Shown: positions 3,891 through 27,700 of the stretch, one piece after another
Layout: each line of letters starts with the position of its first letter
How positions within the stretch are numbered: the first letter of the stretch is position 1
Virus record (IMG/VR): IMGVR_UViG_3300036770_003657
Location: 335,797-399,796 of that record
Length of the DNA: 64,000 bases
Direction: 5' to 3' (one strand)
Made by a program: the position numbers and the translations under genes
The notes under the pieces: model-generated
Seen by the model: only the letters and a program-made list of their open reading frames with translations
The model's database searches: none
Told to the model about the DNA's origin: nothing

Positions 3891-4574
3891 TTACCTTAAC
3901 TCTGGAAACAAACACTCCTGTATGAATATACGTACATCTTCCTCATTCAATCCCAAACTGGTCATTACCTTAGGCGTATGTGGGTTCATCTTTTGGTTCT
4001 GTGCGTAAAAATTCTGTTGTTCGCTAGTATTAAGTACAGTGTTATTAGTTTCACCTACTGTGCTTAAGTAATGATCTACACCCTTGCGAGCCATTTCAAA
4101 GATTTGATCTAGTTCGTGTTCGTCCTGTACATTACCTGCTGCCACCATGCTCTTGCTGAATATACGGGTAGCCCAATCTGGTAGTGCTCTTTCCTTACGC
4201 CATTCCATCTTACTTACTTCGTTGGCAAACCATTCACACATAGGATGATTAGCATCCCCTGTAGGACTATAATCATAAAAACAGCCGGTAATTTTATTCT
4301 TACCGGCTATAACATCAAATCCAAAGATTGGGGCAGGGTTGTGTGTATGTGGAAATACGCAACAATGCATCATCCACAATCCCTTTTTCTCTCTAGCATC
4401 TACAACATCTACGTGAGCCCTACGATATGCTTCACTGGTCCAAACACGGTTTACCCATCCTGGTTGATTAAACCTATCCATACCTGGTTCAAATGCTTCA
4501 GTACCAGTGCGTTCAAAACTTTGCTCTAATAGGTGTTGTACATTAATTAGAGCGTCCCAAACTTTACTCTCCAT
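3891..4574 (-). CDS. pcyX: Ferredoxin-dependent bilin reductase, PcyX/PcyA type
   Basis: RRAHVDVVDAR, LWMMHCCVFP, PIFGFDVIAG and NQKMNPHT motifs; directly downstream of and overlapping heme oxygenase. Confidence 0.88.
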   Translation of the reverse strand: MESKVWDALINVQHLLEQSFERTGTEAFEPGMDRFNQPGWVNRVWTSEAYRRAHVDVVDAREKKGLWMMHCCVFPHTHNPAPIFGFDVIAGKNKITGCFYDYSPTGDANHPMCEWFANEVSKMEWRKERALPDWATRIFSKSMVAAGNVQDEHELDQIFEMARKGVDHYLSTVGETNNTVLNTSEQQNFYAQNQKMNPHTPKVMTSLGLNEEDVRIFIQECLFPELR

Positions 4575-5112
4575 TGTACAAATCCCTCATCATCTTAATG
4601 GCCCATTCAAAGGCCACACGAGCCTCATCACCTAACTCATCTGTGAGTTCGGCTCTGATTGCTACTTTAAGTTGATCAGGATTAGTAAACTCATAGAACT
4701 TGCCACTGCTAATGTGTGCTACTTGTTTCTTAATAATTAAGCCACCATTTAGGTCACCCATATGACGACAATACAAATGTGCCTTAAGTAAATGTCTACG
4801 TTCTAGGTCATTGGTTAGCTGGACCAAATAGTCATGATAGGCTAGGGTCTGTGGTAGCCAAACAAACTTGTGCTCTGGCCCAGCTAATTCCATAAAATCT
4901 TGATATATTGCTGGTAAACGCTCAATACCCTGTATGTTAGCAAAGTGTCCTAACATACGATTACCAAATTCAATTGGTCCGTATATGGGCAATAATTGGT
5001 ATAGATAATTTGCGTAATCTTCCTTACTAATTTTACCACTTAGTAATAGTTTAGCAAATTTAGTTGTTTCCGCCTCGTGATGTAAATCCTTAGTAATCTC
5101 TCTTAAACTCAT
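4564..5112 (-). CDS. hemO: Heme oxygenase
   Basis: TKDLHHEAE (proximal His) and HLYCRHMGDLNGG (distal helix). Confidence 0.92.
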   Translation of the reverse strand: MSLREITKDLHHEAETTKFAKLLLSGKISKEDYANYLYQLLPIYGPIEFGNRMLGHFANIQGIERLPAIYQDFMELAGPEHKFVWLPQTLAYHDYLVQLTNDLERRHLLKAHLYCRHMGDLNGGLIIKKQVAHISSGKFYEFTNPDQLKVAIRAELTDELGDEARVAFEWAIKMMRDLYNGE

Positions 5113-5438
5113 TCTTCCTCCATCTTCACTTGTAAGGGAAATCCGTTAGCCCTAGCCAAGCTAAATGTTTCACTTGATTTGACTTCTGCGATTTCATAAG
5201 TATATGTACCTGCAATACCACTTCCAGACTCGTGAATTTGAAGCGTAATATCTTTAGCTGTTTCGGGAGTATGTTTAAAAATTTCAATTAATATACTAAT
5301 TACAAACTCCATAGGAGTATGATTATCATTAAGGAAAACTACATGATATCGTTTGGGCTCAGACACCCTAATTTTAACTTTTTCATCTAGCACTACATCT
5401 GAGGTTACTTCTGTATCTACAGCCATTATTGACTCCAT
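5109..5438 (-). CDS. clpS: ATP-dependent Clp protease adaptor ClpS
   Basis: YHVVFLNDNHTPMEFV...IHESG...AEVK...ARANGFPL. Confidence 0.93.
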   Translation of the reverse strand: MESIMAVDTEVTSDVVLDEKVKIRVSEPKRYHVVFLNDNHTPMEFVISILIEIFKHTPETAKDITLQIHESGSGIAGTYTYEIAEVKSSETFSLARANGFPLQVKMEEE

Positions 5439-5444
5439 ATAAGT

Positions 5445-5462
5445 GGGGGAGTTTCCTCCCCC
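5445..5462 (-). other. GC-rich hairpin with GAAA loop between hsp20 and clpS (stabiliser or weak terminator)
   Basis: GGGGGAG-GAAA-CTCCCCC on the minus strand; no clear U-tract. Confidence 0.5.
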
Positions 5463-5468
5463 TGTTGA

Positions 5469-5906
5469 TCAAGCTACGTTGACTTGAATCTTCCTTGGCA
5501 ATAATGCTTCTGGAACGATTCGTTCGATTACTACAGTAAGTAATCCATTTTTAAGATCAGCACTCTTAACTTCCATATGTTCTGAAAGAGCAAATGTTCT
5601 ATCAAAACTACGATATGCTAGGCCCCTGTGAAGATATTCAATTTCTCCATCAGTTTCTACTGGCTTCTTTTCACCAGTAATGATTAACTGGTCCTGATCA
5701 ATACTTACATCAATTTCATCTCTACTAAAACCTGCTACTGCTAGGGTAATAGTGTAGATATCACCTTTGCGTTCTAGGTTATAGGGAGGATAGTTGTTAT
5801 TGGCCATACTGTTCCCCCAACTACGTTCCATAGTGTTAAAAATACGATCAAAACCAATCAGCGCTCTATTCAAAGCCGCTGTATCCATTCTAGCTAATTG
5901 TGTCAT
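5469..5906 (-). CDS. ibpA: Small heat shock protein (Hsp20/IbpA family)
   Basis: NYPPYNL, LAVAGF, YLHRGLAYRSFDRTFAL, A.LKNGLL. Confidence 0.93.
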   Translation of the reverse strand: MTQLARMDTAALNRALIGFDRIFNTMERSWGNSMANNNYPPYNLERKGDIYTITLAVAGFSRDEIDVSIDQDQLIITGEKKPVETDGEIEYLHRGLAYRSFDRTFALSEHMEVKSADLKNGLLTVVIERIVPEALLPRKIQVNVA

Positions 5907-5910
5907 AAAA

Positions 5911-5970
5911 TTTCTCCTTTATTAAGCAAGATGCGTGTAGCCTCACCTGAGCACTACACGACTATTTATA
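5911..5970 (-). promoter_or_regulatory. Late promoter TATAAATA plus ROSE-like RNA thermometer for hsp20
   Basis: TATAAATA at 5963-5970; 5' hairpin CGTGTAG/CTACACG; 3' hairpin UCUUGCUU-AAUA-AAGGAGA sequestering the SD. Confidence 0.7.
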
Positions 5971-5975
5971 AGGCA

Positions 5976-7853
5976 TTAGGCTGCGTTTTTAACTTCTGTA
6001 AAATCTACATCCGTAATGTCCTTATCCTGTTGTTGAGGCTGTGCGTTTTTAGCAGTGTAAATAACCTGTGCCGCAGCAGCTAGGTCACTCATCTTCTGTG
6101 TTATTGATTCCTTAGTACCTGTAGCAATCTCAGTTAATAGTGCTGTGATACTAGTTTCAATCTTATCTTTATCATCACTGCTAATCTTATCCTCAACTTC
6201 CTTCAAATCCTTACGAATTTGATGGACTTGTCCGTCTACGCTATTCCTTAAATCAACAATCTCACGCTGTTTGCGATCTTCCTCAGCGTTGGCTTCAGCT
6301 TCACGGATCATTTTTTCAATTTGATCCTTACTTAAACCACCATCTGATTTAATAGTGATCTTGTTTTCTTTGCCTGTAGTCTTATCCTTGGCACTAATTT
6401 TCATAATACCATTAGCATCTACATCAAAGGTTACTTCAATTTGAGGCATACCTCTGGGCTGTGGCATAATACCTTCTAGGTTAAACTCGCCTAGTAGTTT
6501 ATTATCCTTTACAAACTCACGTTCACCTTGGAATACCTTAATAGTGACAGCAGGTTGATTGTCATCTGCTGTGCTAAATGTTTGACTAGCCTTTGTGGGA
6601 ATAGTAGTATTCTTTTGAATGATCTTGGTCATTACTCCACCAAGTGTTTCAATACCAAGACTCAATGGTGTAACATCTAATAACAATACGTCATTGCGTT
6701 CGCCGCTTAGTACAGCACCTTGTACAGCAGCACCCACTGCCACTGCTTCATCTGGGTTAACATCCTTACGTGGCGCTTTACCAAATAACTTTTCTACAGC
6801 GTCCTGTACCTTGGGCATACGTGTCATACCACCAACTAAAATAATTTCATCAATATCTGCTGGTGTAACTCCTGCGTCTTTCATAGCAGTACGACAGGGA
6901 GCAATGCTACGTTCAATTAAATCTTCAACCAATGCTTCTAATTTAGCACGAGTAAGTTTTAGATTCATATGTTTTGGCCCGCTAGCATCAGCAGTAACAT
7001 ATGGTAGATTAATATCTGTTTGTTGGCTGCTACTTAATTCAATTTTAGCCTTTTCCGCTGCCTCTTTAAGACGTTGTAGAGCTAATACATCTTTAGTCAA
7101 GTCAATACCTTGATCCATCTTAAAAGTATCAACTAAGTAATCCATAATACGTTGGTCGAAGTCTTCACCACCTAAGAAAGTATCACCATTAGTGCTTAGT
7201 ACTTCAATTTGTTTGTCATTACCCAAGTTAGCAATTTCAATAATGCTAATATCAAAAGTGCCACCGCCCAAGTCATATACTGCTACCTTACGATCTTTTT
7301 TATCCGTCTTATCAACGCCGTAAGCCAACGCGGCAGCAGTCGGTTCATTAATGATGCGAAGAACTTCCAAGCCAGCAATACGGCCAGCATCTTTAGTAGC
7401 TTGACGCTGACTATCATTAAAATAGGCCGGAACAGTAATAACAGCTTGGGTAACATCATAACCTAAATAATCTTCAGCAGTCTTTTTCATTTTACGCAAT
7501 ACTTCTGCGCTGATTTGAGGAGGTGCTAACTCCTTGCCCTGTGCCTTAACCCAAGCATCACCACTTGAGTTTTCAATGATTTCATAGGGCATTAGATCTA
7601 AATCTTTTTGTACAGCCTCTTCTTTAAACTTACGTCCAATTAAGCGTTTGGCTGCGTATACTGTATTCTTTGGATTAGTAACAGCTTGTCTTTTAGCACT
7701 GGCACCTACAAGAATTTCTTCATCTGTATAGGCTACTATACTGGGAGTAGTACGTGCTCCTTCGCTGTTTTCAATTACTTTGGGATTGCCGCCTTCTATA
7801 ATGGCGACGCAACTGTTAGTAGTACCGAGATCGATACCGATTACCTTACTCAT
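5976..7853 (-). CDS. dnaK: Chaperone DnaK (Hsp70)
   Basis: [35 protein letters not shown]; 625 aa; betaproteobacterial-like segments ([25 protein letters not shown]). Confidence 0.98.
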
Positions 7854-7858
7854 ATGTA

Positions 7859-7913
7859 TCTCCTTAAATTAAGCAAGAATTAAATGGTCTTAGTTAAGCA
7901 CCATTATTATTTA
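7859..7913 (-). promoter_or_regulatory. Late promoter TAAATA plus ROSE-like RNA thermometer for dnaK
   Basis: TAAATA at 7908-7913; 5' hairpin AATGGT/ACCATT; 3' hairpin UCUUGCUU-AAUUU-AAGGAGA. Confidence 0.65.
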
Positions 7914-7915
7914 TT

Positions 7916-8446
7916 TCAATCAAATTTTCTACCCAGCTTTTTAAACATAGTTTGAACACCAATGACCTGCCTCAGAGCATCTTCAAGAGCATGATGCTTA
8001 TTGGCCTGAGGCATTTCAGGATCCATACCCAAATCAAATAGTGTGCGAGTATCTCTTACTTCCCAAAATTTCCAAGGATATGGTTTATTGACTTGTCTAA
8101 AATAGTGTTCTAATATGATAATATCAAATGTACTACCATGACTCCAAAATTTACTAGAGCCCATACAGAACTTGTAGAATTCGTCTAACATCCAACGAAC
8201 GTCTACTCTATCATTGGGATCGAATGCTTCCTCTTGAGCAGCAGGGTCTTGTTTACTCCACCACTCAATAGTATTATCATCAATAAAGCTATCCAATCCT
8301 TCAAAACTTTCTAATTCAATTTTGTAGTAGAAAGTATCGTAGACTTTGGAACTATTGGGGTCAAATGTAGCCGCTCCAATGCTCAATATAGTGGCATTAG
8401 GAGTGGTGGCTAAAGTTTCTAAATCTACCATCAGATGTTTTGTCAT
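7916..8446 (-). CDS. DEDDh 3'-5' exonuclease (Rv2179c / exonuclease VIII-like)
   Basis: HLMVDLETL, WSHGSTFD, RDTRT and HHALEDA motifs. Confidence 0.85.
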   Translation of the reverse strand: MTKHLMVDLETLATTPNATILSIGAATFDPNSSKVYDTFYYKIELESFEGLDSFIDDNTIEWWSKQDPAAQEEAFDPNDRVDVRWMLDEFYKFCMGSSKFWSHGSTFDIIILEHYFRQVNKPYPWKFWEVRDTRTLFDLGMDPEMPQANKHHALEDALRQVIGVQTMFKKLGRKFD

Positions 8447-8474
8447 AATAGTGATTATACAACTAATTTAAGAT

Positions 8475-8702
8475 TTAGTAAAGCTTTGTTGGTAATCTTT
8501 CTTTTTCTAATTTCTTTTTGTACCTATTAACAGCAGCACCATGACGACGTTTGCGTTCGGTAGTTGGTTTTTCAAAAAATTCACGTTTACGTAATTCGTC
8601 TAAAATACCACTATCTTCTACTTTATTTTTAAACTTGCGTAGAGCACGGTTGATATCTTCACCGTCTCTTAATTCCACTTTACGACCATTAAAATTATTC
8701 AT
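8475..8702 (-). CDS. rpsU: Ribosomal protein bS21
   Basis: GEDINRALRKFKNKV...ELRKREFFEKPTTERKR; start moved to the ATG at 8702 overlapping the upstream stop. Confidence 0.9.
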   Translation of the reverse strand: MNNFNGRKVELRDGEDINRALRKFKNKVEDSGILDELRKREFFEKPTTERKRRHGAAVNRYKKKLEKERLPTKLY

Positions 8703-9102
8703 CTTCACCTTCTTGTGTATCATCTACTCTCTTAAAAAATGGTATGCTATCTAAATCATAGATTCTGTTTTTACTTATCAGATGCCACGGAGTTATCTCA
8801 TCTTTAGTGATATAGTAAGAATCAGTCTGTGCTATCATAAATGTAACAAAACTCCTAGTAATTACATCACAATTGTCTATATCAATTATAGTAACATCTG
8901 CATAGCTATGTACACTTAATAACCAATCTAAATCCATTTCATTTTCGTCAAATACAAATACATTGAGTTCTTCAATAATTTCACAAATGTATTTTTGAAA
9001 AGCTTCTTTTACCTCGTTTGTTGGTTTAACCAAAAGTATACTAGGATTTTGATTAAACAACTTATCAGGTGGTGTAATTACGTTAATTTTTCCCAGATTC
9101 AT
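8695..9102 (-). CDS. Hypothetical protein
   Basis: 135-aa ORF tightly packed in the operon. Confidence 0.7.
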   Translation of the reverse strand: MNLGKINVITPPDKLFNQNPSILLVKPTNEVKEAFQKYICEIIEELNVFVFDENEMDLDWLLSVHSYADVTIIDIDNCDVITRSFVTFMIAQTDSYYITKDEITPWHLISKNRIYDLDSIPFFKRVDDTQEGEDE

Positions 9103-17821: not shown

Positions 17822-18706
17822 TTACCATGTAGTAGTATTTTTACCACTATCTCCTATTATTTGTCCAATACTATATGCAGCAGGAGCAGCTACAAATTCC
17901 ACTGGATTATTATGATGTTGTGTTACCCAATCTCTTATTCTAGTCCAGTCTTGAAATAAGCTTTGTGTAGTTGTATATGTTCTTTTAGTACCTTTATTAG
18001 TCGTTAATTCGTAGCTATATGTAATTGTGTAAGTTAAATCATTGGTCCAATAATATATTTCAGATTCAGGTCTTGTTGGACATTCAGTTATATCATACTC
18101 TGTTAAAATTCTAGGAGTAGTGTGTGGAGCAGAGTCAGAAGTAGTAGCACTTGATAAATGATCAACATATTTCATTGTTCCAGTCGGTATCATATCATAA
18201 AATCCACTGGCTTCACAATTATCTGCATTGATAGTCAATGTAATATGATCTAAAAATCTTGGGCGTCTTGGCATACTAATATCAGTACATTGTACTTCAA
18301 TAATTTCTTCATCTTCTTCATCATTATACCATAAGTAAGGTATAGGATCATAATCTGGATTTGGTACTTCTCCTGCATAATTGCCATCACCATCATATGC
18401 AGCTATAGTTTGGGGTAAAAAATGTGCTGGGTTAGGGATATGTGGTGGTTTTACTATTGATGCTCCAACTGTAAAACTAAAATTAGCATAAATTTCTACA
18501 CTGCCTCCAGAACCAGACCAATTAAAAGTATTTCTATAGTCATAGCTATAACTAACACTGTCTCCAGGTTTATCATTACTAGAAGGAGTAAATGTTTCTG
18601 GAGCACGCCACTCTGCTCCATTTTTAAATGGAAAAATAAATGGAAAATCTGTATTAGGTGGAGGAGGTGACTGTATCAGTGTATAGCCATCTATTATCAC
18701 ACTCAT
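17822..18706 (-). CDS. Hypothetical protein, probably baseplate/tail-associated
   Basis: 294 aa, coupled between the giant fibre and PAAR genes. Confidence 0.6.
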   Translation of the reverse strand: MSVIIDGYTLIQSPPPPNTDFPFIFPFKNGAEWRAPETFTPSSNDKPGDSVSYSYDYRNTFNWSGSGGSVEIYANFSFTVGASIVKPPHIPNPAHFLPQTIAAYDGDGNYAGEVPNPDYDPIPYLWYNDEEDEEIIEVQCTDISMPRRPRFLDHITLTINADNCEASGFYDMIPTGTMKYVDHLSSATTSDSAPHTTPRILTEYDITECPTRPESEIYYWTNDLTYTITYSYELTTNKGTKRTYTTTQSLFQDWTRIRDWVTQHHNNPVEFVAAPAAYSIGQIIGDSGKNTTTW

Positions 18707-21700
18707 TATAGTCTCCCTACAACTACTTCAATAACGCCTTCATCACCATCAAAATCTTCTAGTGCTTTACCTATTACCATACCCATACGTGGATCATCAT
18801 GTGCCTTGGCATAGCCATCTCCTGCACTGACCAACATATCACCTTTGCTTATCTTACCACGTACCTTAACTGGTACACGACCTTGTAGAGCAACTGCTAC
18901 AACGTGTTCACCTTCTAGTTCACTGTTCATTAAGTGTGCTGGGTTCTTACTAACTACACCTACTACTTTACGTGTTAAATCTGTACCTATGGTAACTTCA
19001 TTTACTCCACCAATCATTAGAACTGTGCCTTCTTCGTATTTTGCATCAGCAAGATAGTTCTCTGCCAAGTCAGCATATTTTGCTTGTGTAGCTACACCAT
19101 TGAATACAGAAGCATATAATGTATCAGTAGCAGGATTACAGTATATACCACCTGTTCCATAAACACTGTTACCGCTACCCCATAGCATTTGGTATGTAGA
19201 ATTACTATCGTTATTGTAATTGATAGTAACTTGCGAGGAAGTGGAAGCTGAAGCAGCATTACCTGTACAGCTTCCTGAACTTCCACTTACATTACCTGTT
19301 ACATTTCCTGTTAGATTACCAGAAAATGTGGCAGTTATAGTACCTGCACTGAAATTACCACTTGCATCACGTTTGACTAATGTACTTGCTGTATTTGCTG
19401 TAGCACTTGATACATTAAAGGTAGTTCCACTTAATGAAAGATCGGTTCCGGCACTGTAAGTAGTATTAGTATCTGGATTAGCTGGCATAGTCAATGTTAT
19501 TGAACTAGTTCCTGTGATGTGTCCGTTTGCATCATAAGTAACACTAGGTATTTTAAATGTACCACCAAATGCCAGTGTTCTTGTTGCTCCTCCATCACTT
19601 ATTGTACCAGCTGTTACTGAATTACTATGATTAAACGTAGTTCCACTTAGAGATAATCCAGTTCCAGCACTATAGGTAGTATTAGTATCTGGATTAGCTG
19701 GCATAGTCAATGTAATAGTATTGGTACCAGTAATATGTCCATATGCATCATAAGTAACACTAGGTATTTTAAATGTACCACCAAATGCCAGTGTTCTTGT
19801 TGCTCCACCATCACTTACTGTACCAGCTGTTATTGCACTATTGGCATGCCCTAAAGTTATTGTACCTGCTGTACTTTGATTAGCAGTAAACGTACCGGTA
19901 CCAGTTAATCCATTATTACCCTGTACAGTAAGTGTACCATTGCCTATACTGACTGTAGCTGTAGCTACACTAGCAGCAGTAACGTGACCATAACCATCAA
20001 ACTCAAAACTAATATCTTGTATAAATGTATTATCACTGTTATCACTGCTTAAATTACCTACACTGCTAGTGTCAGCATGACTTAGTGTAATAGTACCTGC
20101 TGTACTTTGATTAGCTGTAAATGTACCACTACCAGTTAATCCATTGTTACCCTGTACAGTAAGTGTACCGTTACCTATACTAACTGTGGCAGTAGCTACA
20201 CTAGCACTAGTAACGTGTCCAAATCCATCAAAATCAAAACTAATATCTTGTATAAATGTATTACCACTATTATCACTGCTTAAATTACCTACACTGCTAG
20301 TGTCAGCATGAGAAATATTAACAGTGACACCTTCACCACTTCCTGAAATAGTTAACCCACTAGTTCCAGTTTGACTACCTGGAGTTCCAGAACTTACTGC
20401 TGCTATATAATTACCAGTAGTATCAGTTCCTAGTGCTACACTATCAATTCCAATAGTTGTAGTCATGCTAACATTGTTAGATCCATCAAATGTCACACTA
20501 CCACTAACATCACCAGTTAAGGCAATAGTTCTGGCTGTAGCTAATTTTGTAGCAGTGTCAGCGTTCCCACTCAATCCACCACTTACACTACCTTGGAAAG
20601 TTCCTGCGATAACAGTTGACCCTGCTCCAAATGTCCATTTATCAACACTTTCATCCCATAATAAACTTACGTTGGTATCAGTACCTCTTTCTATTTCTAT
20701 ACCAGCATTTTGTGTTGGTTCAGCAGTTTCGTTACTATTCAGTACAATGATATTATCAGCTAACTCAATAGTTTCAGTATTGATTGTAGTAGTTGTGCCA
20801 CTTACTGTTAGATTACCACCAATAACAGTATTACCTGTAACGTTAAAGTTTCCACCAACATTAAGGTTTTCAGTTACCGCTACTCCACCAGTAACAATTA
20901 AAGTACCAGTTGACGTATTTGTACTGGATATATTACCTGCCATTTCAATACGGCCAGTCCCAAATACCTTAAACTTATCTGCACTGGCTAAATTAGTAGG
21001 TCCACCATAAGTAAAGGCTATGTAGCTGGTAGTATCAGTTACCGTAATAACCTTATCTATAGCCCAATGACTCTTTAGGTTATTATCCTTTACAAACGCA
21101 CTACCATTCCAATTTAAATTAGTTAACCAACTAAATCTATTGGTTGTTCCTACACTAGTAAATCTAGTTTTAAAATCTGTAGTATAAGCACTTTGTAAAG
21201 TAACACTAGTTAATGCCCCACTGCCATTGTAGGTAATATTAAAAGTTGGATCATCTATAGTAGGTGCTGCTTTATAAATCACCTGTCCACCAGTAGTAAA
21301 GTTAATAGTGCTACCATCAGTGGCTTGGAACGTCATGGTGTTACTTGCTGTTAATGTCTTAGCATTAGCCAATGTAAATGTACCTGTGCTGTTGGAAATA
21401 GTCATTCCATTTACAGTCTTATTGGTCAATGCTTCTGTACCTGCCAATGTAGCCAATGTACCTGTCGTTGGGAAGGTTACACTGGTTGCAGCAGTCATAG
21501 TAAATGTGCTGGCATATGCTCCTGATGTAGTTAAGTTACCTCCTAAGGTTATAGTCTTTGTACCATTGTTAACACCAGTGCCACCATATGTTGGGCTAAT
21601 TATGCTGGCTTGCCAAGTACCTGTACTAATAGTGCCTACTCCAGTTAGACTACTATTGACAACACCTGAACCTAATGTTGTACTACTCAATACATCTACA

Positions 21701-24700
21701 CCGTTGATCTTATAAGTTTTACCTGTGGCAAGATCCATGTTCTCACTACTGGTCCAGCTACTTGTAGATTGTATCCAACGGAAAAGTTTATCAGTGGTGC
21801 CTTTTATTGTTATACCACCTCCAGCTGCTGTAGCATCAGTAATTCCACCAGTGTTGAAAACTACAGCCACTCCATTTGGACTAATTTGATCTGGTGGTGT
21901 ATCAGCTGTAAACGTAAACAAATTAGCACCATTAATAGCAGTTACTCTTGGATTGGCACCTAATTGACCACCACTTACTCTACTCAATGTCATCCCAGGA
22001 ATCATTCCTGCTGTACTAGCAGTAATTGTAGTTGTCAGTGCTCCAATAGCGGTAAAGTTAATATTGCCACTACGACTTGATATTGGTTCTACTGAGCCTA
22101 ATTCAATATTGTTATCATCCATTTGGATGTCATATGCATTAAGAGTGCTGGCAGCACCGGTAATATTAACATTACCATTTACAGTGAGCCCGTTTAAGGT
22201 TATGCTGTCGGTCCAAACTGGACGTTTATTAGCACTGCCTAAACTCACTGGCTGAACATTTAACACAGAATTAGTATCACCTATAGGTAATTTTTGTATT
22301 ATGGTGGAGCCACTGGCATATAACATGTCCCCGACAGTATAACTGGCAATATTAGTACCACCCTTATCTACAGGAACTTGACCAATAATATTACTTGGTG
22401 TTAGATAATATAATCCATCTTGTCCATCTAGAGTACCTGCATCTACTACACCTGATTTAATACCAACAGCACCCTGACTACCTCCGGTACCTACTTCAAA
22501 TTGACTCTTATTAAATGACGCTACACCTAAGTTTGTATGGCCAGGGATATTTGCATTTTCCTGTCCTCCACTGACTACATCCACACCAACAGTAACTTCA
22601 TTGTAGAATTCTTGTATGCCTCCAGGTCCTGGATCAAAGAATGGGCCAGTTATAGTAATAGCACTATCAACACTTGGTTTTTTGATCTTTTGTACGGCCT
22701 TGGCCCATGTACTATCGCCTCTTAAAAAGGTGTTACTATTAGCAGTACCAATAGCTAATCTAGTAGTGCTCATTATACCACTAACAATATTAGTTGTATC
22801 TATATTACTGGCGCTTAGACTACTCCAGTTTTCTGCCAGTATACTAGCATTATCTACAACACCAATAATTTTAATGCTTTGCTTTCTAAAACTAGCAACC
22901 CCAGTACCAGTATTAGTAAAATTAAATGCACCAATAGTAAGACCTAATGTACTGGCCACTGCATCAGCTCTACCTTCATGTATAGTAAAGGTGTTAGTAG
23001 TCACACTTCCTACAAAGAATATGCTGTTAGTTAGTATACCGTATGGTGGATCTGCTGCAATAATTTTTACTGCATCACCAGTAGCAAATCCATGATCTGG
23101 AATATAAACTGTATCTTTGGTGATATCTAATATAGATAATGTTAAAGTTTGATTACCTGCACCAGAGTTAACAATTGTTAACTTGGTTGATAGACTATAA
23201 GTTGTATAAAGTTCAATAGTATCAGCATCAATACTTTTCACATAATAGATGCTATTATTAACAATCCCACCTAATGGTGTTCCAAATCCTGCATTATATT
23301 GTACAGCATCACCATCATCAAATGGGTGACCAACGATAGTTATACGACTTAGCGCAGTATTAACATTGCCTCCTGAACCTGTACTAGCAGCATTAAATGT
23401 AGCAACTACAGTACTGTCTAATTGATCAGTTGTTTTCGTTACAACATTTGCATCTTCTGTAAATTCTGGGGCTATACTATTTGCATTAAACTTCAATGCG
23501 CCAACAATATCAACATACACACGATTTTGTATTTGGCTAACCTTAACACTAAATGCGCTTCCACCTGTACGTCCATTCAAATTTGCATCATTTGCACTGA
23601 GTCTATCTACTGTGGTATACCCACTTCCACCGGCAGTTAGTACTACATTAGTAACGACTCCACCACTTAGGAACAGGTCTGCCCTAGCTCCAGTTCCTGA
23701 TCCTCCTGTTAAAGGCACATCAGTATAAAATCCTGAAGGTGGTTGAGTATATCCACTACCCCCTGCTAATCCTGTTACTGGATCATTGCTATTATCTAGT
23801 GCATTAGCAACACCTTCTACAATATATTCTATAGTGCCTTGTGCTTGACTATTACTACCTGTTACACTAGTTACTCCTGTAAAATCATAAGTTTGAGTTG
23901 GGTCTAATAGTAATATCTGTTTACTATCTAATTCACTTAAAATGTAATTGGTATTTTGATCTGGAATAATACCTCCTACTAGGGTAGGTGTTAATCCAGT
24001 GCTTGCACCATTAAGAGTTATTTCTCCTACAGTATCAAATGTATCGTCAAAAAATTCACCTAAACTTCCAATGACTACAGTAGTAGAATTATTGCCACCG
24101 ACTACTCGACCAGTTGCTCCAGAACTGGCTTGTAGGATTAAGTCACCATCAACGGCCACTAATACACCATCTAGAGTCAACGATACTCCACTATATGTTT
24201 CAATGGCTAAATCACCATTTAAAATACTAGTAGGAGGTACTGTATTGACCAAGTTTAGTCTACTACGATATCCATTACTTCTATATACTAAGAAGTTTCT
24301 TAATGGTGGTATCTGATCAGCACTTAATTTTCCTAGTGCATTTAACTGAGGGATACCACCTGGTTGAGTAGTAGTTGTAAGTTCTTTGTCAATAAAGTCT
24401 CCTAGTCTATTTTCTAAGAAACTTCTAACAGCCAACTGTGTGCTTAATCTATTATGACTTGGTCCGCCTACTTCATTATCACCGAGATCAATATCAGCAC
24501 TAAATTCTTCAATAGTAATATTACCAACAGCCAACTTCAACGCATCTAAAGCAGCAATACTAACAGTGTTTGTAAATTGTACATTACCTGTTTTGTTTTC
24601 AGCTTTAATAAAATCACCAACTTTAAAGTCACCAAGTTCATTGGTTCCTGAACTATATACACGCCCTGGTAATTCACTGACTTGTTCATATTCAACTCTA

Positions 24701-27700
24701 GTACGTCCACCGTTTTGTGGTAATGCATTATAGTCAGTTCCGCTACCTGCATATTCCCAAGTGTGGCTACTGCTGTTAACAATACTAGGTCTATGCAACC
24801 ATATCTGTTTACTTGGCAGTGTTTCTAAATTGATTAGTTCATTACCACTGGTAGTGGCCAATATCTTAAATGTTGCCGTGTATAAGTTATCTACGTTTTG
24901 GACATCAGTTACATCAATATTTAAAATAGCAGGGCTACCATTGTCATATTGAATAACAGTATCTAAGGTAAAGTTATTTCTAATAAAATTTTCCCCAACT
25001 AATACTTTTTCTACGCTAACAACTAGGCTTCGTGTTGTTGGATCCCAACTGAATATATATGCTCTATTTGGTGTTATACCACTGGTTGTACCTTCGATTA
25101 CTCTACCTGGAATAAATGTATAACTTTGTCCTATAGGAGGAGGTTCTACTTGTAATTTTTGATATACAACGTGACTTTCAGTGAGATCATCAATAAAAAA
25201 TTCTTTAATATTCTTTAATAAAAGATGTTCACCTGTTGGTAGTGGAGCAGTAAATTTTGCCTTTATTTCAAAACCATCGTCCAAATATAATTCAAATTGA
25301 TTGGCATTTAAAATTTTAATTACATAAGTTTGTTCGTCATAAAGACCTTTAATTAAACTATTTCCATTAGCTCTATAAACTATTTTCTCTGTATTTTGAA
25401 AACCGTGAGCAGGAATTGTTATGACATTAGTATTGACATTTATAACTGGTTCGATTTGTGCAGGACTAGTTCCTGGAATGGTGACATTATTACTTGGTGT
25501 AAAAGGTACCTGATCATCCACCTGTTTGTAACTATTAGTTACATCTCCAATATTACTATAGTCAACTATTTCTGGAACATTAATGATACTGTCAATAATA
25601 TCTATAATGATATCAAATAAATCACCAACTCTACTCTGTGCATCAGGATGTACTAGCGCAATAGTTAACGATTTTAGTTCTTGGAAGGCAGCAATATTTT
25701 GAGTTCTTTGATTTATTAGAGCTGCCACAGTGCTTGTAGAATAGGCTACACCAGCTTCAACGCTTTTACTATTGCCTCCTGTTAGTACATCATATGCTAC
25801 TGCCTCTAATACTAGTAAAGTATCTCTTCTACAAGTATCTTGATCATATGTAAATCCTGTATAATATGGCGCTGTGTTGGCAGTTACTTGGCTGTCAATC
25901 CAAGTTATTAGTGCATCTCTTAATTCTTCTTTGTTATTTAAAATTGTACTATATGTTTCTCTATATACAGGATTTCTAAATCTTATTACATAGTGCTGTA
26001 CTGGTAGGTCCCCAAAACCAATAGCAGTAATAGTTTGTTGTGCTCCTGCGCTGCCTGTAGCAACTACAATACCTTTATTAAAATCAAAAGCATTAGGACT
26101 ATAACCATTGGCCCTTAAAGCAAATTGACCAAAGTTAGTAGCACTATTGGTAATACTTAGATATCCACCGCTTTGACAATAACTACCATTTAAACAGAAG
26201 ATCTGGAAACAGCTAACAATCTGTGCATATGCATCATTAATAACACGATATCCTGTACCCCCAAAGCTCAACATAGTAAATGCATTACCTACCATTGATT
26301 TACCTTGTTGCGGAGCAGGTCCTTCTACTGGGTTCTCTGCTTCAATTTGATTAACAGGTATATTTGGTGTACGTACTTTACTACCATCAACCAATACACC
26401 ATTACCACCTAAGAAGCTGATTATACTACAGTTCTGCACATATGGGCTAATACTAATAACTGGTTTATTATTTGGTAGTCTAGTATATCCTACACGACTA
26501 CATTCTGGATCAGCTGGATCATCAAACGCCACTGCATAGTCAAATGTAAAGCTAGGTATATTGTTTACATCCAGTGCATCTCTGAAAGTTATCTCTGTAA
26601 AATAACAGCCATTACGTACACGTAGCATATCCTTACCAGCATTAAGTGGTCTAATATTACAGGCACGTAGACCAGCTCCTACTACACTAACGTTATCTGG
26701 AATAATAATTGGATTATCTTCGTAATAGTCTCCACTAGCAACTGCTATAACAATACGCTTTTCGTTTGGAATGTAGTCAGCAACAAAAGCTACAGTTTCG
26801 GTTTGAATGATTTCCTTGTCTGCTAGTAATGCTGCTCTAGCATCACTCTTAGTTGGACTTATTGGTGTAGCATTAGGATATTCTGTATTTGGTGCTTGAC
26901 TGGGTCCTTGATCTATAATTGTTACTACATATCCTAAAAGTTCCTGAGCTTTATCTATGGCAGCACTGCTGGCTGGATCTCCTACACCAAATGCGTTGAG
27001 ATCATTTTCTAATACTAAATTGATTATTTCTTCTTTCAAATATCTATATGTTATTGCACTGGCTTGTCTATCATTGAATATAGGTAATCCCATTCCATAA
27101 CTAAAATATTTTTTAGCAGCATCTATAGTTTGACTATTGCCACCATACATTAGGTCATAGGCTAAACTGTAGACTAGATATCTTATATCACGAGCGCACT
27201 TTTCTTCATTATAAGTAAAGTTATTAAACTCAACAGTAATAAATTGACTTACTCCAGTAATAATAGCAGCTTTGTTTTCCTGTATCAGTCCAAAATTAAG
27301 TTGCGTTGTTGGATTAGCCGAACTAATGTCTGGAAATACTTTATTGTTTAAAGAACTAGTATTTTCATCTGTAATAACATCAATGATTATATCAACTAAA
27401 TCTTGGCATTTGATAGTTTGTTCAGAATTAGTAGCAGGATATAATGAAGTATCTTGTGTAAGAAGATTGGTACTAGATTTAGTAATTGGTACTGCGTTAA
27501 CAATATCACCAATAATCTCTTGTAGTCTTGTATATGCTGCTAGTGTTTGTGCCTTCTCACCAGCACCTAATTGTAGCACGGCTCCAAATATATAAGCTTC
27601 TGCATTAGAATAGGTTGCACTATTACCGCCATATAATACATCGTATGTTATAGCATCAACTATAAATTCTACATCACGTCTACATTTATCTATTATACTT

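What the first reader, a model, noticed from the sequence alone, without database searches (positions are those of the whole stretch)
5911..7913. ROSE-like RNA thermometers in front of both hsp20 and dnaK, under late promoters
Seen in sequence: both leaders (5911-5960 and 7859-7905) consist of TAAATA, an unrelated 5' hairpin containing GUGCU, and then UCUUGCUU-(AAUA/AAUUU)-AAGGAGA. This last hairpin pairs the SD with a bulged G. Established knowledge: U(U/C)GCU pairing with AGGA and a bulged G defines ROSE elements, known mainly from proteobacterial small-HSP genes. Inference: the phage gates chaperone translation by temperature independently of sigma32. A ROSE element on dnaK, and in a phage, is unusual.
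Basis: partly seen in the sequence, partly recalled or inferred. Interest (0 to 1): 0.68.

Follow-up and report, generated by a model that had tools for sequence, protein, structure and literature searches.

The report
ROSE-like leaders on phage chaperone genes
A 400-kb freshwater phage places the same two-hairpin, ROSE-type "RNA thermometer" leader in front of both its dnaK and hsp20 chaperone genes; this leader is conserved across hundreds of phages, including cultured cyanophages, and does not appear in the literature I could search.

Summary
On the minus strand, hsp20 (5469-5906) and dnaK (5976-7853) each have three things upstream:
- a T4-type late-promoter motif (TATAAATA / AATAAATA);
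- a hairpin with a bulged G;
- UCUUGCUU, a short A/U loop, AAGGAGA, then 5-6 nt and AUG.

The 3' module occurs only twice in the 399,796-bp genome. It is kept in about 110 distinct leaders from 80 related viral contigs, and it also precedes groES-groEL where relatives carry those genes.

The design is U.G wobble, bulged purine, C-G pair in both hairpins. It matches the experimentally validated short ROSE-like thermometers of Pseudomonas ibpA and the E. coli ibpA and ibpB leaders. Rfam ROSE scores are below threshold (17.7-28 bits), but validated ROSE elements score in that same range against ROSE models from other lineages.

All eight cultured phages I inspected have the same leader before hsp20: cyanophages, a pelagiphage, and Agrobacterium and Sinorhizobium jumbo phages.

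Temperature sensing itself is untested, and nearest-neighbour folding is uninformative here. One thing is unexplained: the bulged purine switches G to A in concert in every hairpin of a genome, together with an Ala-to-Thr change in Hsp20. This hints at a trans-acting reader.

The parts
5963..5970 (-). TATAAATA, a T4-type late-promoter motif for hsp20, 5 nt after the dnaK stop codon (5976-5978)
   Evidence: Sequence. ATAAATA occurs 90 times in the genome. 48% of copies lie within 100 nt upstream of a same-strand gene start, against 14% for the reverse complement and 8% for permuted words. Genes downstream of it include virion structural proteins, a baseplate hub and a head-tail adaptor.
5934..5960 (-). 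hsp20 leader hairpin 1: lower stem, U.G pair, bulged G (5952), C-G/U-A/C-G apical stem, AGGU loop
   Evidence: Folding. In 26 relatives, 8 of its 11 pairs show compensatory changes and 91% of cells are paired. Covariation is 0.365, against 0.145 for shuffles (0 of 500 reach it) and 0.127 or less for slid partners.
5913..5931 (-). hsp20 SD hairpin: anti-SD UCUUGCUU (5931-5924, unpaired G at 5927), loop AAUA, SD AAGGAGA (5919-5913)
   Evidence: 36.5 bits with model R1. 96.7% of cells are paired across relatives, but there are no compensatory changes because the SD is invariant.
5469..5906 (-). hsp20, an IbpA-like small heat-shock protein of 145 aa
   Evidence: PF00011, E 7e-17. 41% identical to E. 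coli IbpA, with the Arg equivalent to IbpA R93 retained.
7908..7915 (-). AATAAATA, a late-promoter-like motif for dnaK, directly after the stop codon (7916-7918) of the upstream exoribonuclease gene
   Evidence: 59 of 62 distinct dnaK leaders in relatives carry (G/T/A)ATAAATA 50-85 nt before the AUG.
7883..7905 (-). dnaK leader hairpin 1: AAUGGU[G]CUU-AACU-AAGACCAUU, bulged G at 7899
   Evidence: It aligns to the first hairpin of Rfam ROSE_2, including the bulge. It is found as part of the full-length match of model R2, which was built from hsp20 leaders only (39 bits, E 1.6e-6).
7859..7878 (-). dnaK SD hairpin: anti-SD UCUUGCUU (7878-7871, unpaired G at 7874), loop AAUUU, SD AAGGAGA (7865-7859)
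   Evidence: 28.5 bits with R1.
5976..7853 (-). dnaK (Hsp70), 625 aa
   Evidence: PF00012, E 1.7e-260.

Best explanation
Each leader is a short, two-hairpin member of the ROSE class of cis-acting translational control RNAs.

Shown:
- Hairpin 1 is a conserved, covarying stem with a bulged purine.
- The second hairpin can pair the strong SD AAGGAGA with the anti-SD (U)CUU[G]CUU, leaving the G unpaired next to a U.G wobble. This is the U(U/C)GCU/AGGA arrangement that defines ROSE.
- The same module precedes dnaK, hsp20 and, in relatives, groES-groEL.
- It sits downstream of a T4-type late-promoter motif, or inside the dnaK-hsp20 transcript.

Inferred:
- At low temperature the weak, imperfect SD hairpin limits 30S binding. 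On warming it melts, and the strong SD drives chaperone synthesis.
- Late-transcribed phage chaperone mRNAs would therefore be translated according to temperature (and perhaps protein-folding stress) without needing host sigma-32.
- The hsp20 gene and its leader were probably captured together from a proteobacterial ibpA-type gene, and the leader was then re-used on the other phage chaperone genes.
For: Specificity and conservation:
- Only two sites exist in the 400-kb genome, both at chaperone genes.
- NCUU[G/A]CUU, a 2-6 nt loop, AAGGAGA, 4-7 nt and AUG are conserved in about 110 distinct leaders.
- Substitutions are compatible with the structure: U.G to C-G, and variation confined to the bulge.
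- Third copies precede groES-groEL in L025, L027, L048 and L056.
- Hairpin 1 covaries.
- 46 of 62 distinct hsp20 leaders have no promoter of their own yet keep both hairpins, so the element acts on RNA and on translation.

ROSE-likeness:
- The dnaK leader aligns end to end (positions 1-73) to ROSE_2, with both hairpins and both bulges in register, at 17.7 bits.
- The L017 dnaK leader scores 20.9 bits against ROSE_3. Cultured-phage hsp20 leaders score 26.8-28.0 bits against ROSE_3, E 0.013-0.028 across all 4227 families.
- Calibration: the validated E. coli ibpA element scores only 20.8 bits against ROSE_3, and the ibpB leader 15.2 bits against ROSE_2. Only 4 of 20 bacterial ROSE-type leaders reach the RF00435 gathering score.
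- Reciprocal test: the phage-derived model R1 picks the E. coli ibpB leader as its best hit in the ibpAB region. That leader reads ACUCGCUU-CUUAG-AAGGAGA behind a UUCG hairpin.
- The closest bacterial Hsp20 homologues carry U(U/C)GCU..GGAGG in 66 of 80 cases and a bulged-G upstream hairpin in 72 of 80.

ROSE definition and the Pseudomonas two-hairpin thermometers of 61-62 nt: PMC3669281 and PMC6096418.

Other context: AAGGAG is a rare, strong SD in this genome, found at 14 of 319 long ORFs.
Against: - No phage leader reaches an Rfam gathering score. The window's hsp20 leader gets no ROSE hit at all at E<=10.
- ViennaRNA gives the isolated SD hairpins only -1.7 and -2.2 kcal/mol at 37 C, with z-scores near 0.
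- In full-leader context the SD is predicted paired with probability 0.4-0.5 (hsp20) and 0.1-0.2 (dnaK), with no decrease on heating. The two genes rank 136th and 239th of 278 for predicted SD occlusion. The same method also fails on the validated E. coli ibpA element, so this weighs little.
- The SD hairpin shows no compensatory covariation, because the SD is invariant. Its conservation could therefore reflect sequence-specific recognition rather than pairing.
- Temperature dependence was not, and cannot be, tested here.
Confidence: 0.62

Rival explanations
1. The two bulged-purine hairpins are operators for a trans-acting translational repressor. The most plausible candidate is the phage's own IbpA-like Hsp20, by analogy with E. 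coli IbpA, which binds the ibpA and ibpB 5'UTRs and is titrated away by aggregated proteins. On this reading the regulon (dnaK, hsp20, groESL) responds to protein-folding load during virion assembly. Temperature would be secondary, or a parallel input.
For: - The unpaired purine is G or A, and it is the same in hairpin 1 and the SD hairpin of both dnaK and hsp20 within a contig: GGGG in 30 contigs, AAAA in 23, and no G/A mixing. The remaining 19 contigs have an hp1(dnaK) call that is a mis-parse of cUUCGg apices. The same concordance holds for the groES leaders.
- Hsp20 residue 58, in the motif AV[A/T]GF, is Ala in all 38 distinct G-type proteins and Thr in all 23 A-type proteins. The flanking synonymous sites vary freely. 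No DnaK column separates the two types perfectly.
- The phage Hsp20s keep the Arg equivalent to IbpA R93, which E. coli IbpA needs for mRNA binding (PMC10474464).
- The SD hairpin is conserved in sequence rather than by covariation.
Against: - The G/A switch needs only 1-2 changes on the Hsp20 tree and 2-5 on the DnaK tree, so the perfect association may reflect shared history.
- That Arg is missing only in E. coli IbpB among the 14 sHsps aligned, and my recollection is that an arginine at this position is widely conserved in alpha-crystallin domains, so its presence discriminates little.
- No binding evidence exists.
- Bacterial ROSE elements have the same two bulged Gs, and ROSE-like elements of this design (the Pseudomonas ibpA leaders) confer temperature-dependent 30S binding in vitro (PMC3669281).
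Confidence: 0.22
2. The leader is an inherited but now non-regulatory 5'UTR. It would be a stabilising 5' hairpin plus a strong SD, carried along with a captured ibpA-type gene and copied to neighbouring genes, with no temperature or stress control.
For: Predicted SD-hairpin stability is marginal, and the predicted SD occlusion is unremarkable compared with other genes of the genome.
Against: - The anti-SD octamer and the bulge position are almost invariant across contigs whose DnaK is only 74-91% and whose Hsp20 is only 40-84% identical, while loops, spacers and stems drift freely.
- The element is restricted to chaperone genes and was recruited independently to dnaK and groES.
- A neutral relic would have decayed.
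Confidence: 0.08
3. It is a DNA-level element: a binding site for a transcription factor, or part of a promoter or terminator, rather than an RNA structure.
For: Conserved sequence lies close to a promoter motif. Hairpin 1 follows the stop codon of the upstream gene.
Against: - Compensatory base changes maintain hairpin 1.
- The motif is strand-specific and locked at 4-7 nt from the SD-AUG.
- It persists where no promoter motif is present.
- There is no terminator-like T-run and no excess of sigma-70-like sites.
Confidence: 0.03

Closest known systems
Short ROSE-like RNA thermometers of Pseudomonas ibpA (Rfam ROSE_3, RF02523; Krajewski et al. 2013, PMC3669281)
   Same: - Two hairpins in a 5'UTR of about 60 nt.
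- Hairpin I is GC-rich with a bulged G before CC..GG (model consensus GGAU[G]CCG..CGGGUCC).
- Hairpin II pairs ACU(C)GCU with AGGAG.
- The AUG is unpaired and the downstream gene is an sHsp.
- Phage hsp20 leaders give the best heterologous Rfam scores against this model: 20.9-28.0 bits.
   Different: - Scores are below the gathering score of 43.
- The phage versions are AT-rich, with CUU/AAG in place of CUG/CAG, so the SD stem is weaker.
- They are driven by T4-type late or phage promoters rather than sigma-32.
- They are also found on dnaK and groES.
- An A-bulge variant exists.
- They sit in phage genomes, including phages of cyanobacteria and SAR11.
E. coli ibpA (Rfam ROSE_2, RF01832) and the ibpA-ibpB intergenic leader of ibpB
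   Same: - The ROSE_2 consensus has two successive hairpins, each with a bulged G three pairs below the loop. The window's dnaK leader aligns to all 73 model positions.
- The ibpB leader (UUCG hairpin, then ACUCGCUU-CUUAG-AAGGAGA-N7-AUG) is nearly identical in layout to phage leaders such as that of L017.
- Like the hsp20 leaders of many relatives, it sits inside an operon transcript.
   Different: - E. coli ibpA has additional 5' hairpins in a UTR of about 100 nt.
- Sequence similarity is low: 17.7 bits, against 100.4 bits for ibpA itself.
- The host is an enterobacterium, with sigma-32 transcription.
Classical rhizobial ROSE (Rfam RF00435)
   Same: - The closest cellular homologues of the phage Hsp20 (40-49% identity, mostly Alphaproteobacteria) carry these elements.
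- They share the U(U/C)GCU-GGAGG hairpin and an upstream hairpin with a bulged G before CC..GGG.
   Different: - Three to four hairpins in about 100 nt, GC-rich.
- The AUG is often included in the last stem.
- No RF00435 hit on the phage leaders at E<=10.
Phage lambda cIII RNA thermometer (from my own knowledge, not checked here)
   Same: An RNA thermosensor encoded by a phage that controls translation initiation.
   Different: - It uses two alternative structures and acts in the opposite sense.
- It has no ROSE motif and does not control a chaperone gene.
Cyanobacterial hsp17 thermometers (PMC4152365, PMC4477652; titles and abstracts only)
   Same: A translational thermosensor on an sHsp gene, in the host group of many phages that carry the hsp20 leader.
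   Different: [quoted passage not shown]
- Not described as ROSE-like in the abstracts read; I did not compare the sequences.
- The cyanophage leaders follow the proteobacterial ROSE design instead.

Membership tests
ROSE / ROSE-like RNA thermometers | Located in the 5'UTR or leader of a small heat-shock gene | tested here: met
   Met for hsp20 (PF00011). Not met in the strict sense for dnaK and groES, which are not sHsp genes. The review PMC6096418 states that all known ROSE elements precede sHsp genes.
ROSE / ROSE-like RNA thermometers | Conserved U(U/C)GCU anti-SD opposite the SD in the 3'-proximal hairpin, with imperfect pairing | tested here: met
   CUUGCUU lies opposite AAGGAG in both leaders. 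Relatives have UUGCU, UCGCU, UUACU or UCACU.
ROSE / ROSE-like RNA thermometers | Unpaired ('bulged') G in the anti-SD strand | tested here: met
   G5927 and G7874 are unpaired in the predicted hairpins and align to the bulge column of ROSE_2. In one phage clade the base is A instead.
ROSE / ROSE-like RNA thermometers | Two to four hairpins, 60 to more than 100 nt, with a stable 5' hairpin | tested here: met
   Two hairpins. The distance from the end of the promoter motif to the AUG is 54-56 nt, slightly shorter than the Pseudomonas UTRs of 61-62 nt. Hairpin 1 is supported by covariation. Many relatives have three hairpins.
ROSE / ROSE-like RNA thermometers | Reaches the curated Rfam gathering score for RF00435, RF01832 or RF02523 | tested here: not met
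   The best scores are 17.7 bits (window dnaK leader, ROSE_2, gathering score 65), 20.9 bits (L017, ROSE_3, gathering score 43) and 28.0 bits (Atu_ph07, ROSE_3). Validated heterologous ROSE elements score 15-21 bits across models, and only 4 of 20 bacterial leaders pass RF00435. This criterion is therefore narrow.
ROSE / ROSE-like RNA thermometers | Temperature-dependent melting of the SD hairpin and of translation | not testable with these tools
   ViennaRNA profiles from 5 to 50 C show no melting-type behaviour, either for the phage leaders or for the validated E. coli ibpA element. Reporter, toeprint or probing experiments are needed.
T4-type late promoter | TATAAATA-like motif, oriented, intergenic, upstream of late (virion) genes | tested here: met
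   - 18 of 27 TATAAATA copies and 58 of 90 ATAAATA copies are not fully inside coding sequence, although 87% of the genome is coding.
- 48% of copies lie within 100 nt upstream of a same-strand start, against 14% for the reverse complement.
- The motif precedes virion structural, baseplate hub and adaptor genes.
T4-type late promoter | Presence of gp55/gp33-type late transcription factors, and a mapped transcription start | not tested
   I did not search for gp55 or gp33 homologues. The RNA-library contigs available cannot show 5' ends.
freshwater-2 RNA (Rfam RF02980) | Reaches the gathering score of 49.9 bits | tested here: not met
   19.5-22.8 bits on the L017 and L052 leaders. The score comes mainly from the AAGGAGAAAA-AUG part plus a generic hairpin, and the model has no CUUGCUU.

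The most novel reading that the evidence does not exclude
The leaders are more than thermometers. The tandem hairpins, each presenting the same U.G / bulged-purine / C-G motif, would be read by a trans-acting protein, most likely the phage's IbpA-like Hsp20. This would make dnaK, hsp20 and groESL a phage-encoded, self-regulating proteostasis regulon that senses aggregation load during assembly of a giant virion. The G-to-A switch of every bulge in a genome, together with Ala58-to-Thr in Hsp20, would then be RNA-protein co-evolution. Because bacterial ROSE elements carry the same two bulged Gs, this reading would also reinterpret ROSE elements in general as dual temperature and sHsp sensors.
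Probability: 0.2. Interest if true: 0.85.

Novelty: new variant of a known kind. Interest (0 to 1): 0.72.

Why it matters
- ROSE elements are described as 5'UTR thermometers of small heat-shock genes in alpha- and gamma-proteobacteria (PMC6096418, PMC3669281). Here the same design is phage-borne and runs from phage promoters.
- It controls an Hsp70 gene and, in relatives, a chaperonin operon as well as hsp20.
- It precedes hsp20 in all eight cultured phages inspected, whose hosts include Synechococcus, Prochlorococcus, Pelagibacter, Agrobacterium and Sinorhizobium. hsp20 is a core gene of marine T4-like cyanophages (PMC3037559).
- An RNA-only switch needs no host factor. That would explain how it travels across host phyla, and it would let abundant aquatic phages match chaperone output to water temperature.
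- The cultured phage-host pairs make this directly testable.
- I found no description of it in the held literature, and no Rfam family captures it at threshold.

Tried and rejected
- **Rfam at gathering threshold** on 16 related loci gave nothing.
- **freshwater-2 (RF02980)** gave weak hits. I considered it as a prior description of the element and rejected that: about 20 bits, a different pre-SD sequence, and nothing on it in the paper's main text or held supplements.
- **Nearest-neighbour folding and temperature profiles** give no support, but they also fail on the validated E. coli ibpA element, so I treat them as uninformative.
- **MAFFT alignment of the short SD modules (A1)** mis-placed the loop gaps and was not used for pair counts. 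I used a gap-free seed (A2) and anchored parsing instead.
- **Terminator or sigma-70 promoter explanation:** there are no terminator-like sites at the leaders and no more sigma-70-like sites than in shuffles.
- **RNA evidence:** four metatranscriptome runs hold contigs over the region, and two freshwater runs hold exact-match contigs spanning 5922-6013 and 5922-6028. Contigs cannot show 5' ends, strand or level, and DNA carry-over cannot be excluded.
- **Host identification** was not resolved:
  - No close cultured phage by blastn.
  - Leader-bearing contigs are binned into Polynucleobacter, Haliscomenobacter and alphaproteobacterial MAGs.
  - SD usage (GGAG upstream of 62 of 319 long ORFs) suggests to me an SD-using host rather than Bacteroidota, which I recall use few SD sequences. 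That differs from the host prediction for the freshwater 'moraphages' (PMC12619734). Whether this phage belongs to that lineage was not tested.
- **Alternative pairing of the anti-SD** with dnaK codons 2-3 (CUUGCUUA with UGAGUAAG) is the minimum-free-energy fold of the dnaK leader. I noted it but did not adopt it, because by eye the hsp20 start has at most a 3-nt match and the groES starts none.
Full report
**What is there**

The window is the last 64 kb of a 399,796-bp IMG/VR virus record, CheckV-complete and 36.6% G+C. The finding lies on the minus strand, in a run of proteostasis and translation genes:

| Gene | Coordinates |
|---|---|
| ribosomal protein S21 | 8475-8723 |
| Rv2179c-like 3'-5' exoribonuclease | 7916-8446 |
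| dnaK | 5976-7853 |
| hsp20 | 5469-5906 |
| clpS | 5109-5438 |
| heme oxygenase | 4564-5112 |

Read on the minus strand, the two leaders are:
- hsp20: TATAAATA-gu-CGUGUAGU[G]CUC-AGGU-GAGGCUACACG-ca-UCUU[G]CUU-AAUA-AAGGAGA-aauuuu-AUG
- dnaK: AAUAAAUA-au-AAUGGU[G]CUU-AACU-AAGACCAUU-uaau-UCUU[G]CUU-AAUUU-AAGGAGA-uacau-AUG

Only the promoter motifs fall slightly outside the stated leader coordinates.

**Is it more than chance?**

- The exact 10-mer CTTGCTTAAT occurs only at these two places in the window.
- The strict and relaxed anti-SD/SD patterns occur only at these two places in the whole genome.
- A covariance model of the SD hairpin (R1) scores 36.5 and 28.5 bits at the two leaders. The next best hit in the genome is 13.2 bits.
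- A DnaK-based search of IMG/VR returned 80 contigs with DnaK 74-91% identical, nearly all with dnaK followed by hsp20.
- In about 110 distinct leaders from those contigs the module NCUU[G/A]CUU, a 2-6 nt A/U loop, AAGGAGA, 4-7 nt and AUG is preserved before both genes. Loops, spacers and the upstream stems drift freely.
- The substitutions that occur fit the hairpin: U.G to C-G in ACUCGCUU, and G/A at the unpaired position.
- R1 also found third copies in L025/L026, L027, L048 and L056. These precede a 95-97-aa Cpn10 and a 539-541-aa Cpn60, that is groES-groEL, with the same two-hairpin layout.
- The window's own genome has no groEL. Its DnaJ gene, more than 110 kb away, has a different leader.

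**The upstream hairpin is not 'unrelated'**

- Across 26 hsp20 leaders, hairpin 1 has 11 pairs, 8 of them with compensatory changes. Covariation is 0.365 against 0.145 in shuffles (0 of 500 reach it) and 0.127 or less when partners are slid. It is a real RNA structure.
- Its invariant core is a U.G (or C-G) pair, a single unpaired purine, then a C-G pair and two or three more pairs below a 3-5 nt loop. This is the same local motif as in the SD hairpin: U.G, unpaired G, C-G, U-A, U-A.
- A model built only from hsp20 leaders (R2) finds the window's dnaK leader over its full length at 39 bits, E 1.6e-6.

**Comparison with ROSE**

ROSE-like elements are defined as two to four hairpins, 60 to more than 100 nt, upstream of sHsp genes. 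They have a stable 5' hairpin, and the SD is trapped imperfectly by U(U/C)GCU in the 3' hairpin. The Pseudomonas ibpA versions have just two hairpins in 61-62 nt and have been validated by reporter assays, toeprinting and probing (PMC3669281, PMC6096418). The phage leaders meet every sequence and structure criterion.

Rfam results:
- The window's dnaK leader aligns to all 73 positions of ROSE_2, with both hairpins and both bulges in register, but at only 17.7 bits against a gathering score of 65.
- The L017 dnaK leader gives 20.9 bits against ROSE_3.
- hsp20 leaders of cultured phages give 26.8-28.0 bits against ROSE_3, with E 0.013-0.028 even after counting all 4227 families.
- None reaches a gathering score.

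Calibration shows that this criterion is narrow:
- E. coli ibpA scores 100.4 bits on its own model but only 20.8 on ROSE_3.
- The E. coli ibpB leader scores 15.2 bits on ROSE_2.
- Only 4 of 20 bacterial ROSE-type leaders pass RF00435.

Reciprocal and contextual evidence:
- The phage-derived R1 picks, as its best hit in the E. coli ibpAB region, the ibpB leader GCGAAUCUUCGGAUUUGC-aggu-ACUUACUCGCUU-CUUAG-AAGGAGA-aaugacu-AUG. That is the same layout as the phage leaders.
- The phage Hsp20 is IbpA-like (41% identical to E. coli IbpA).
- Its closest cellular homologues (40-49% identity) are mostly alphaproteobacterial. They carry U(U/C)GCU..GGAGG in 66 of 80 cases and an upstream hairpin with a bulged G before C-G in 72 of 80, against 16% in shuffles.
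- The ROSE_3 consensus for hairpin I (GGAU[G]CCG..CGGGUCC) is the phage hairpin 1.

**Late promoters**

- ATAAATA occurs 90 times in the genome, and 58 copies are not fully inside coding sequence although 87% of the genome is coding.
- 48% of copies lie within 100 nt upstream of a same-strand gene start, against 14% for the reverse complement and 8% for permuted words.
- Genes behind it include several virion structural proteins, a baseplate hub and a head-tail adaptor.
- Typical leaders behind this motif are 15-30 nt. Those of dnaK and hsp20 are 54-56 nt.
- In relatives, 59 of 62 distinct dnaK leaders carry (G/T/A)ATAAATA, but only 16 of 62 hsp20 leaders do. hsp20 is therefore usually translated from the dnaK transcript through its own internal copy of the element, which argues for action on RNA.
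- I did not search for gp55 or gp33 homologues, and no transcript 5' ends are available. RNA-library contigs cover the hsp20 leader and the dnaK 3' end exactly but cannot show starts.

**How general is it?**

- tblastn with the Hsp20 finds 511 phage records, mostly T4-like cyanophages.
- All eight cultured phages I inspected have the same two-hairpin leader before hsp20: S-SKS1, P-TIM68, P-TIM40, S-RIM4, C48C1, Pelagibacter phage Mosig, Agrobacterium phage Atu_ph07 and Sinorhizobium phage Phosso.
Of the first 80 contigs, 62 have the motif directly before an hsp20 ORF and several more are cut by contig ends. A few precede a peroxiredoxin or unknown small ORFs.
- What distinguishes the window's lineage is that the element has been extended to dnaK, and to groESL in relatives.

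**Mechanism and its limits**

The most likely mechanism is the ROSE one. A weak, imperfect SD hairpin limits initiation in the cold and melts on warming, exposing a strong SD. AAGGAG is found at only 14 of 319 long ORFs in this genome.

This is inference. ViennaRNA gives the isolated SD hairpins only -1.7 and -2.2 kcal/mol and predicts no unusual occlusion or melting. It fails equally on the validated E. coli ibpA element. From my own knowledge, the ROSE SD helix has been reported to depend on non-canonical pairs, which nearest-neighbour energy models do not capture; that would explain the failure.

**An unexplained extra**

- The unpaired purine is G in one set of contigs and A in another. 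Within a contig it is the same in hairpin 1 and the SD hairpin of dnaK and hsp20: GGGG in 30 contigs, AAAA in 23, and no G/A mixing. The other 19 contigs have an hp1(dnaK) call that is a mis-parse of cUUCGg apices. The groES leaders inspected follow the same rule.
- Hsp20 residue 58 (AV[A/T]GF) is Ala in all 38 distinct G-type proteins and Thr in all 23 A-type proteins. The neighbouring synonymous sites are free, and no DnaK column separates the types as cleanly.
- E. coli IbpA is known to repress ibpA and ibpB translation by binding their 5'UTRs (PMC10474464). The phage Hsp20s keep the Arg that this binding requires.
- This suggests a trans-acting reader. However, the switch needs only 1-2 changes on the Hsp20 tree and 2-5 on the DnaK tree, so shared history cannot be excluded.

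**Verdict**

The leaders belong, by design and very probably by descent, to the ROSE class. The thermometer function is plausible but untested. A ROSE-type element in phages, on dnaK and groES, and spread through cyanophage, pelagiphage and rhizobiophage hsp20 genes does not appear in the literature I could search, and no Rfam family captures it at threshold.

Noticed in passing
L025:1410-1478, L048:5395-5452, L056:5405-5433, L027:3098-3120: In some relatives a groES (95-97 aa, PF00166) and groEL (539-541 aa, PF00118) operon sits next to dnaK. It carries the same two-hairpin leader, and the bulge type matches that of the contig. The window's own genome has no groEL.
   Followed up: yes
Related loci L003-L082, and window 5733-5735 (codon 58 of hsp20): The unpaired purine (G or A) is identical in all leader hairpins of a contig. 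It tracks Ala/Thr at Hsp20 residue 58 perfectly (61 of 61 distinct proteins). The trees require only 1-5 independent switches.
   Followed up: partly
L179-L186 (cultured phages S-SKS1, P-TIM68, Atu_ph07, Phosso, Pelagibacter Mosig, S-RIM4, C48C1, P-TIM40): All eight have a ROSE-like two-hairpin leader before hsp20. Several sit behind TATAAATA or TATAAT-like motifs. These are tractable systems for testing.
   Followed up: partly
L197:1910-2500, L204, L215, L240, L247, L254, L261: The same ACUCGCUU..AAGGAG module, often with the bulged-G hairpin, precedes an AhpC/TSA peroxiredoxin and several unknown 63-85-aa ORFs in other viral contigs. The regulon may extend beyond chaperones.
   Followed up: partly
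G000:C1:228768-228830 (L177:1678-1740, minus strand): The phage DnaJ gene, more than 110 kb from dnaK, lacks the ROSE-like module. A 9-bp hairpin (UUAAGGCUG..CAGCCUUAA) followed by UUUUU abuts its AUG, and the only SD-like AAGG lies in the 5' arm. This may be a different kind of structural control, or simply the terminator of the upstream gene.
   Followed up: no
window 7851-7877, minus strand: In the dnaK leader the anti-SD CUUGCUUA is also complementary to UGAGUAAG (the start codon and codons 2-3), and this pairing is the predicted minimum-free-energy fold. By eye, 4-6 bp of such complementarity exist in most relatives' dnaK leaders, while the hsp20 start has at most a 3-nt match and the groES starts none.
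   Followed up: partly
window 18706-30990, minus strand: A single 4094-aa ORF sits behind an ATAAATA motif with a 50-nt structured leader. It was not characterised.
   Followed up: no
window 4564-8723, minus strand: A co-oriented cluster of ribosomal protein S21, an Rv2179c-like 3'-5' exoribonuclease, DnaK, Hsp20, ClpS and heme oxygenase: a translation and proteostasis island in a jumbo phage. No tRNA genes were found in the window.
   Followed up: partly
L147 (Polynucleobacter MAG, 5.4-kb contig), L098 (Haliscomenobacter MAG, 70-kb contig), L140 (alphaproteobacterial MAG, 84-kb contig): These contigs, filed under bacterial MAGs, carry hsp20 with a leader of the phage type. L147 and L098 also carry an ATAAATA motif; L140 does not in the stretch read. 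None has an adjacent dnaK. At least the first two are probably phage contigs binned with bacteria, so they are weak and conflicting host hints.
   Followed up: partly
L017:5394-5463, L052:3446-3503 and 5382-5455: Rfam freshwater-2 RNA (RF02980) gives 19.5-22.8-bit sub-threshold hits on these leaders, driven by the shared AAGGAGAAAA-AUG style and a hairpin. That orphan motif may come from related freshwater phages.
   Followed up: partly
window 5922-6028: Two freshwater metatranscriptome runs contain contigs identical to the hsp20 leader, its promoter motif and the dnaK 3' end. This is consistent with read-through transcription from dnaK, but DNA carry-over cannot be excluded.
   Followed up: partly
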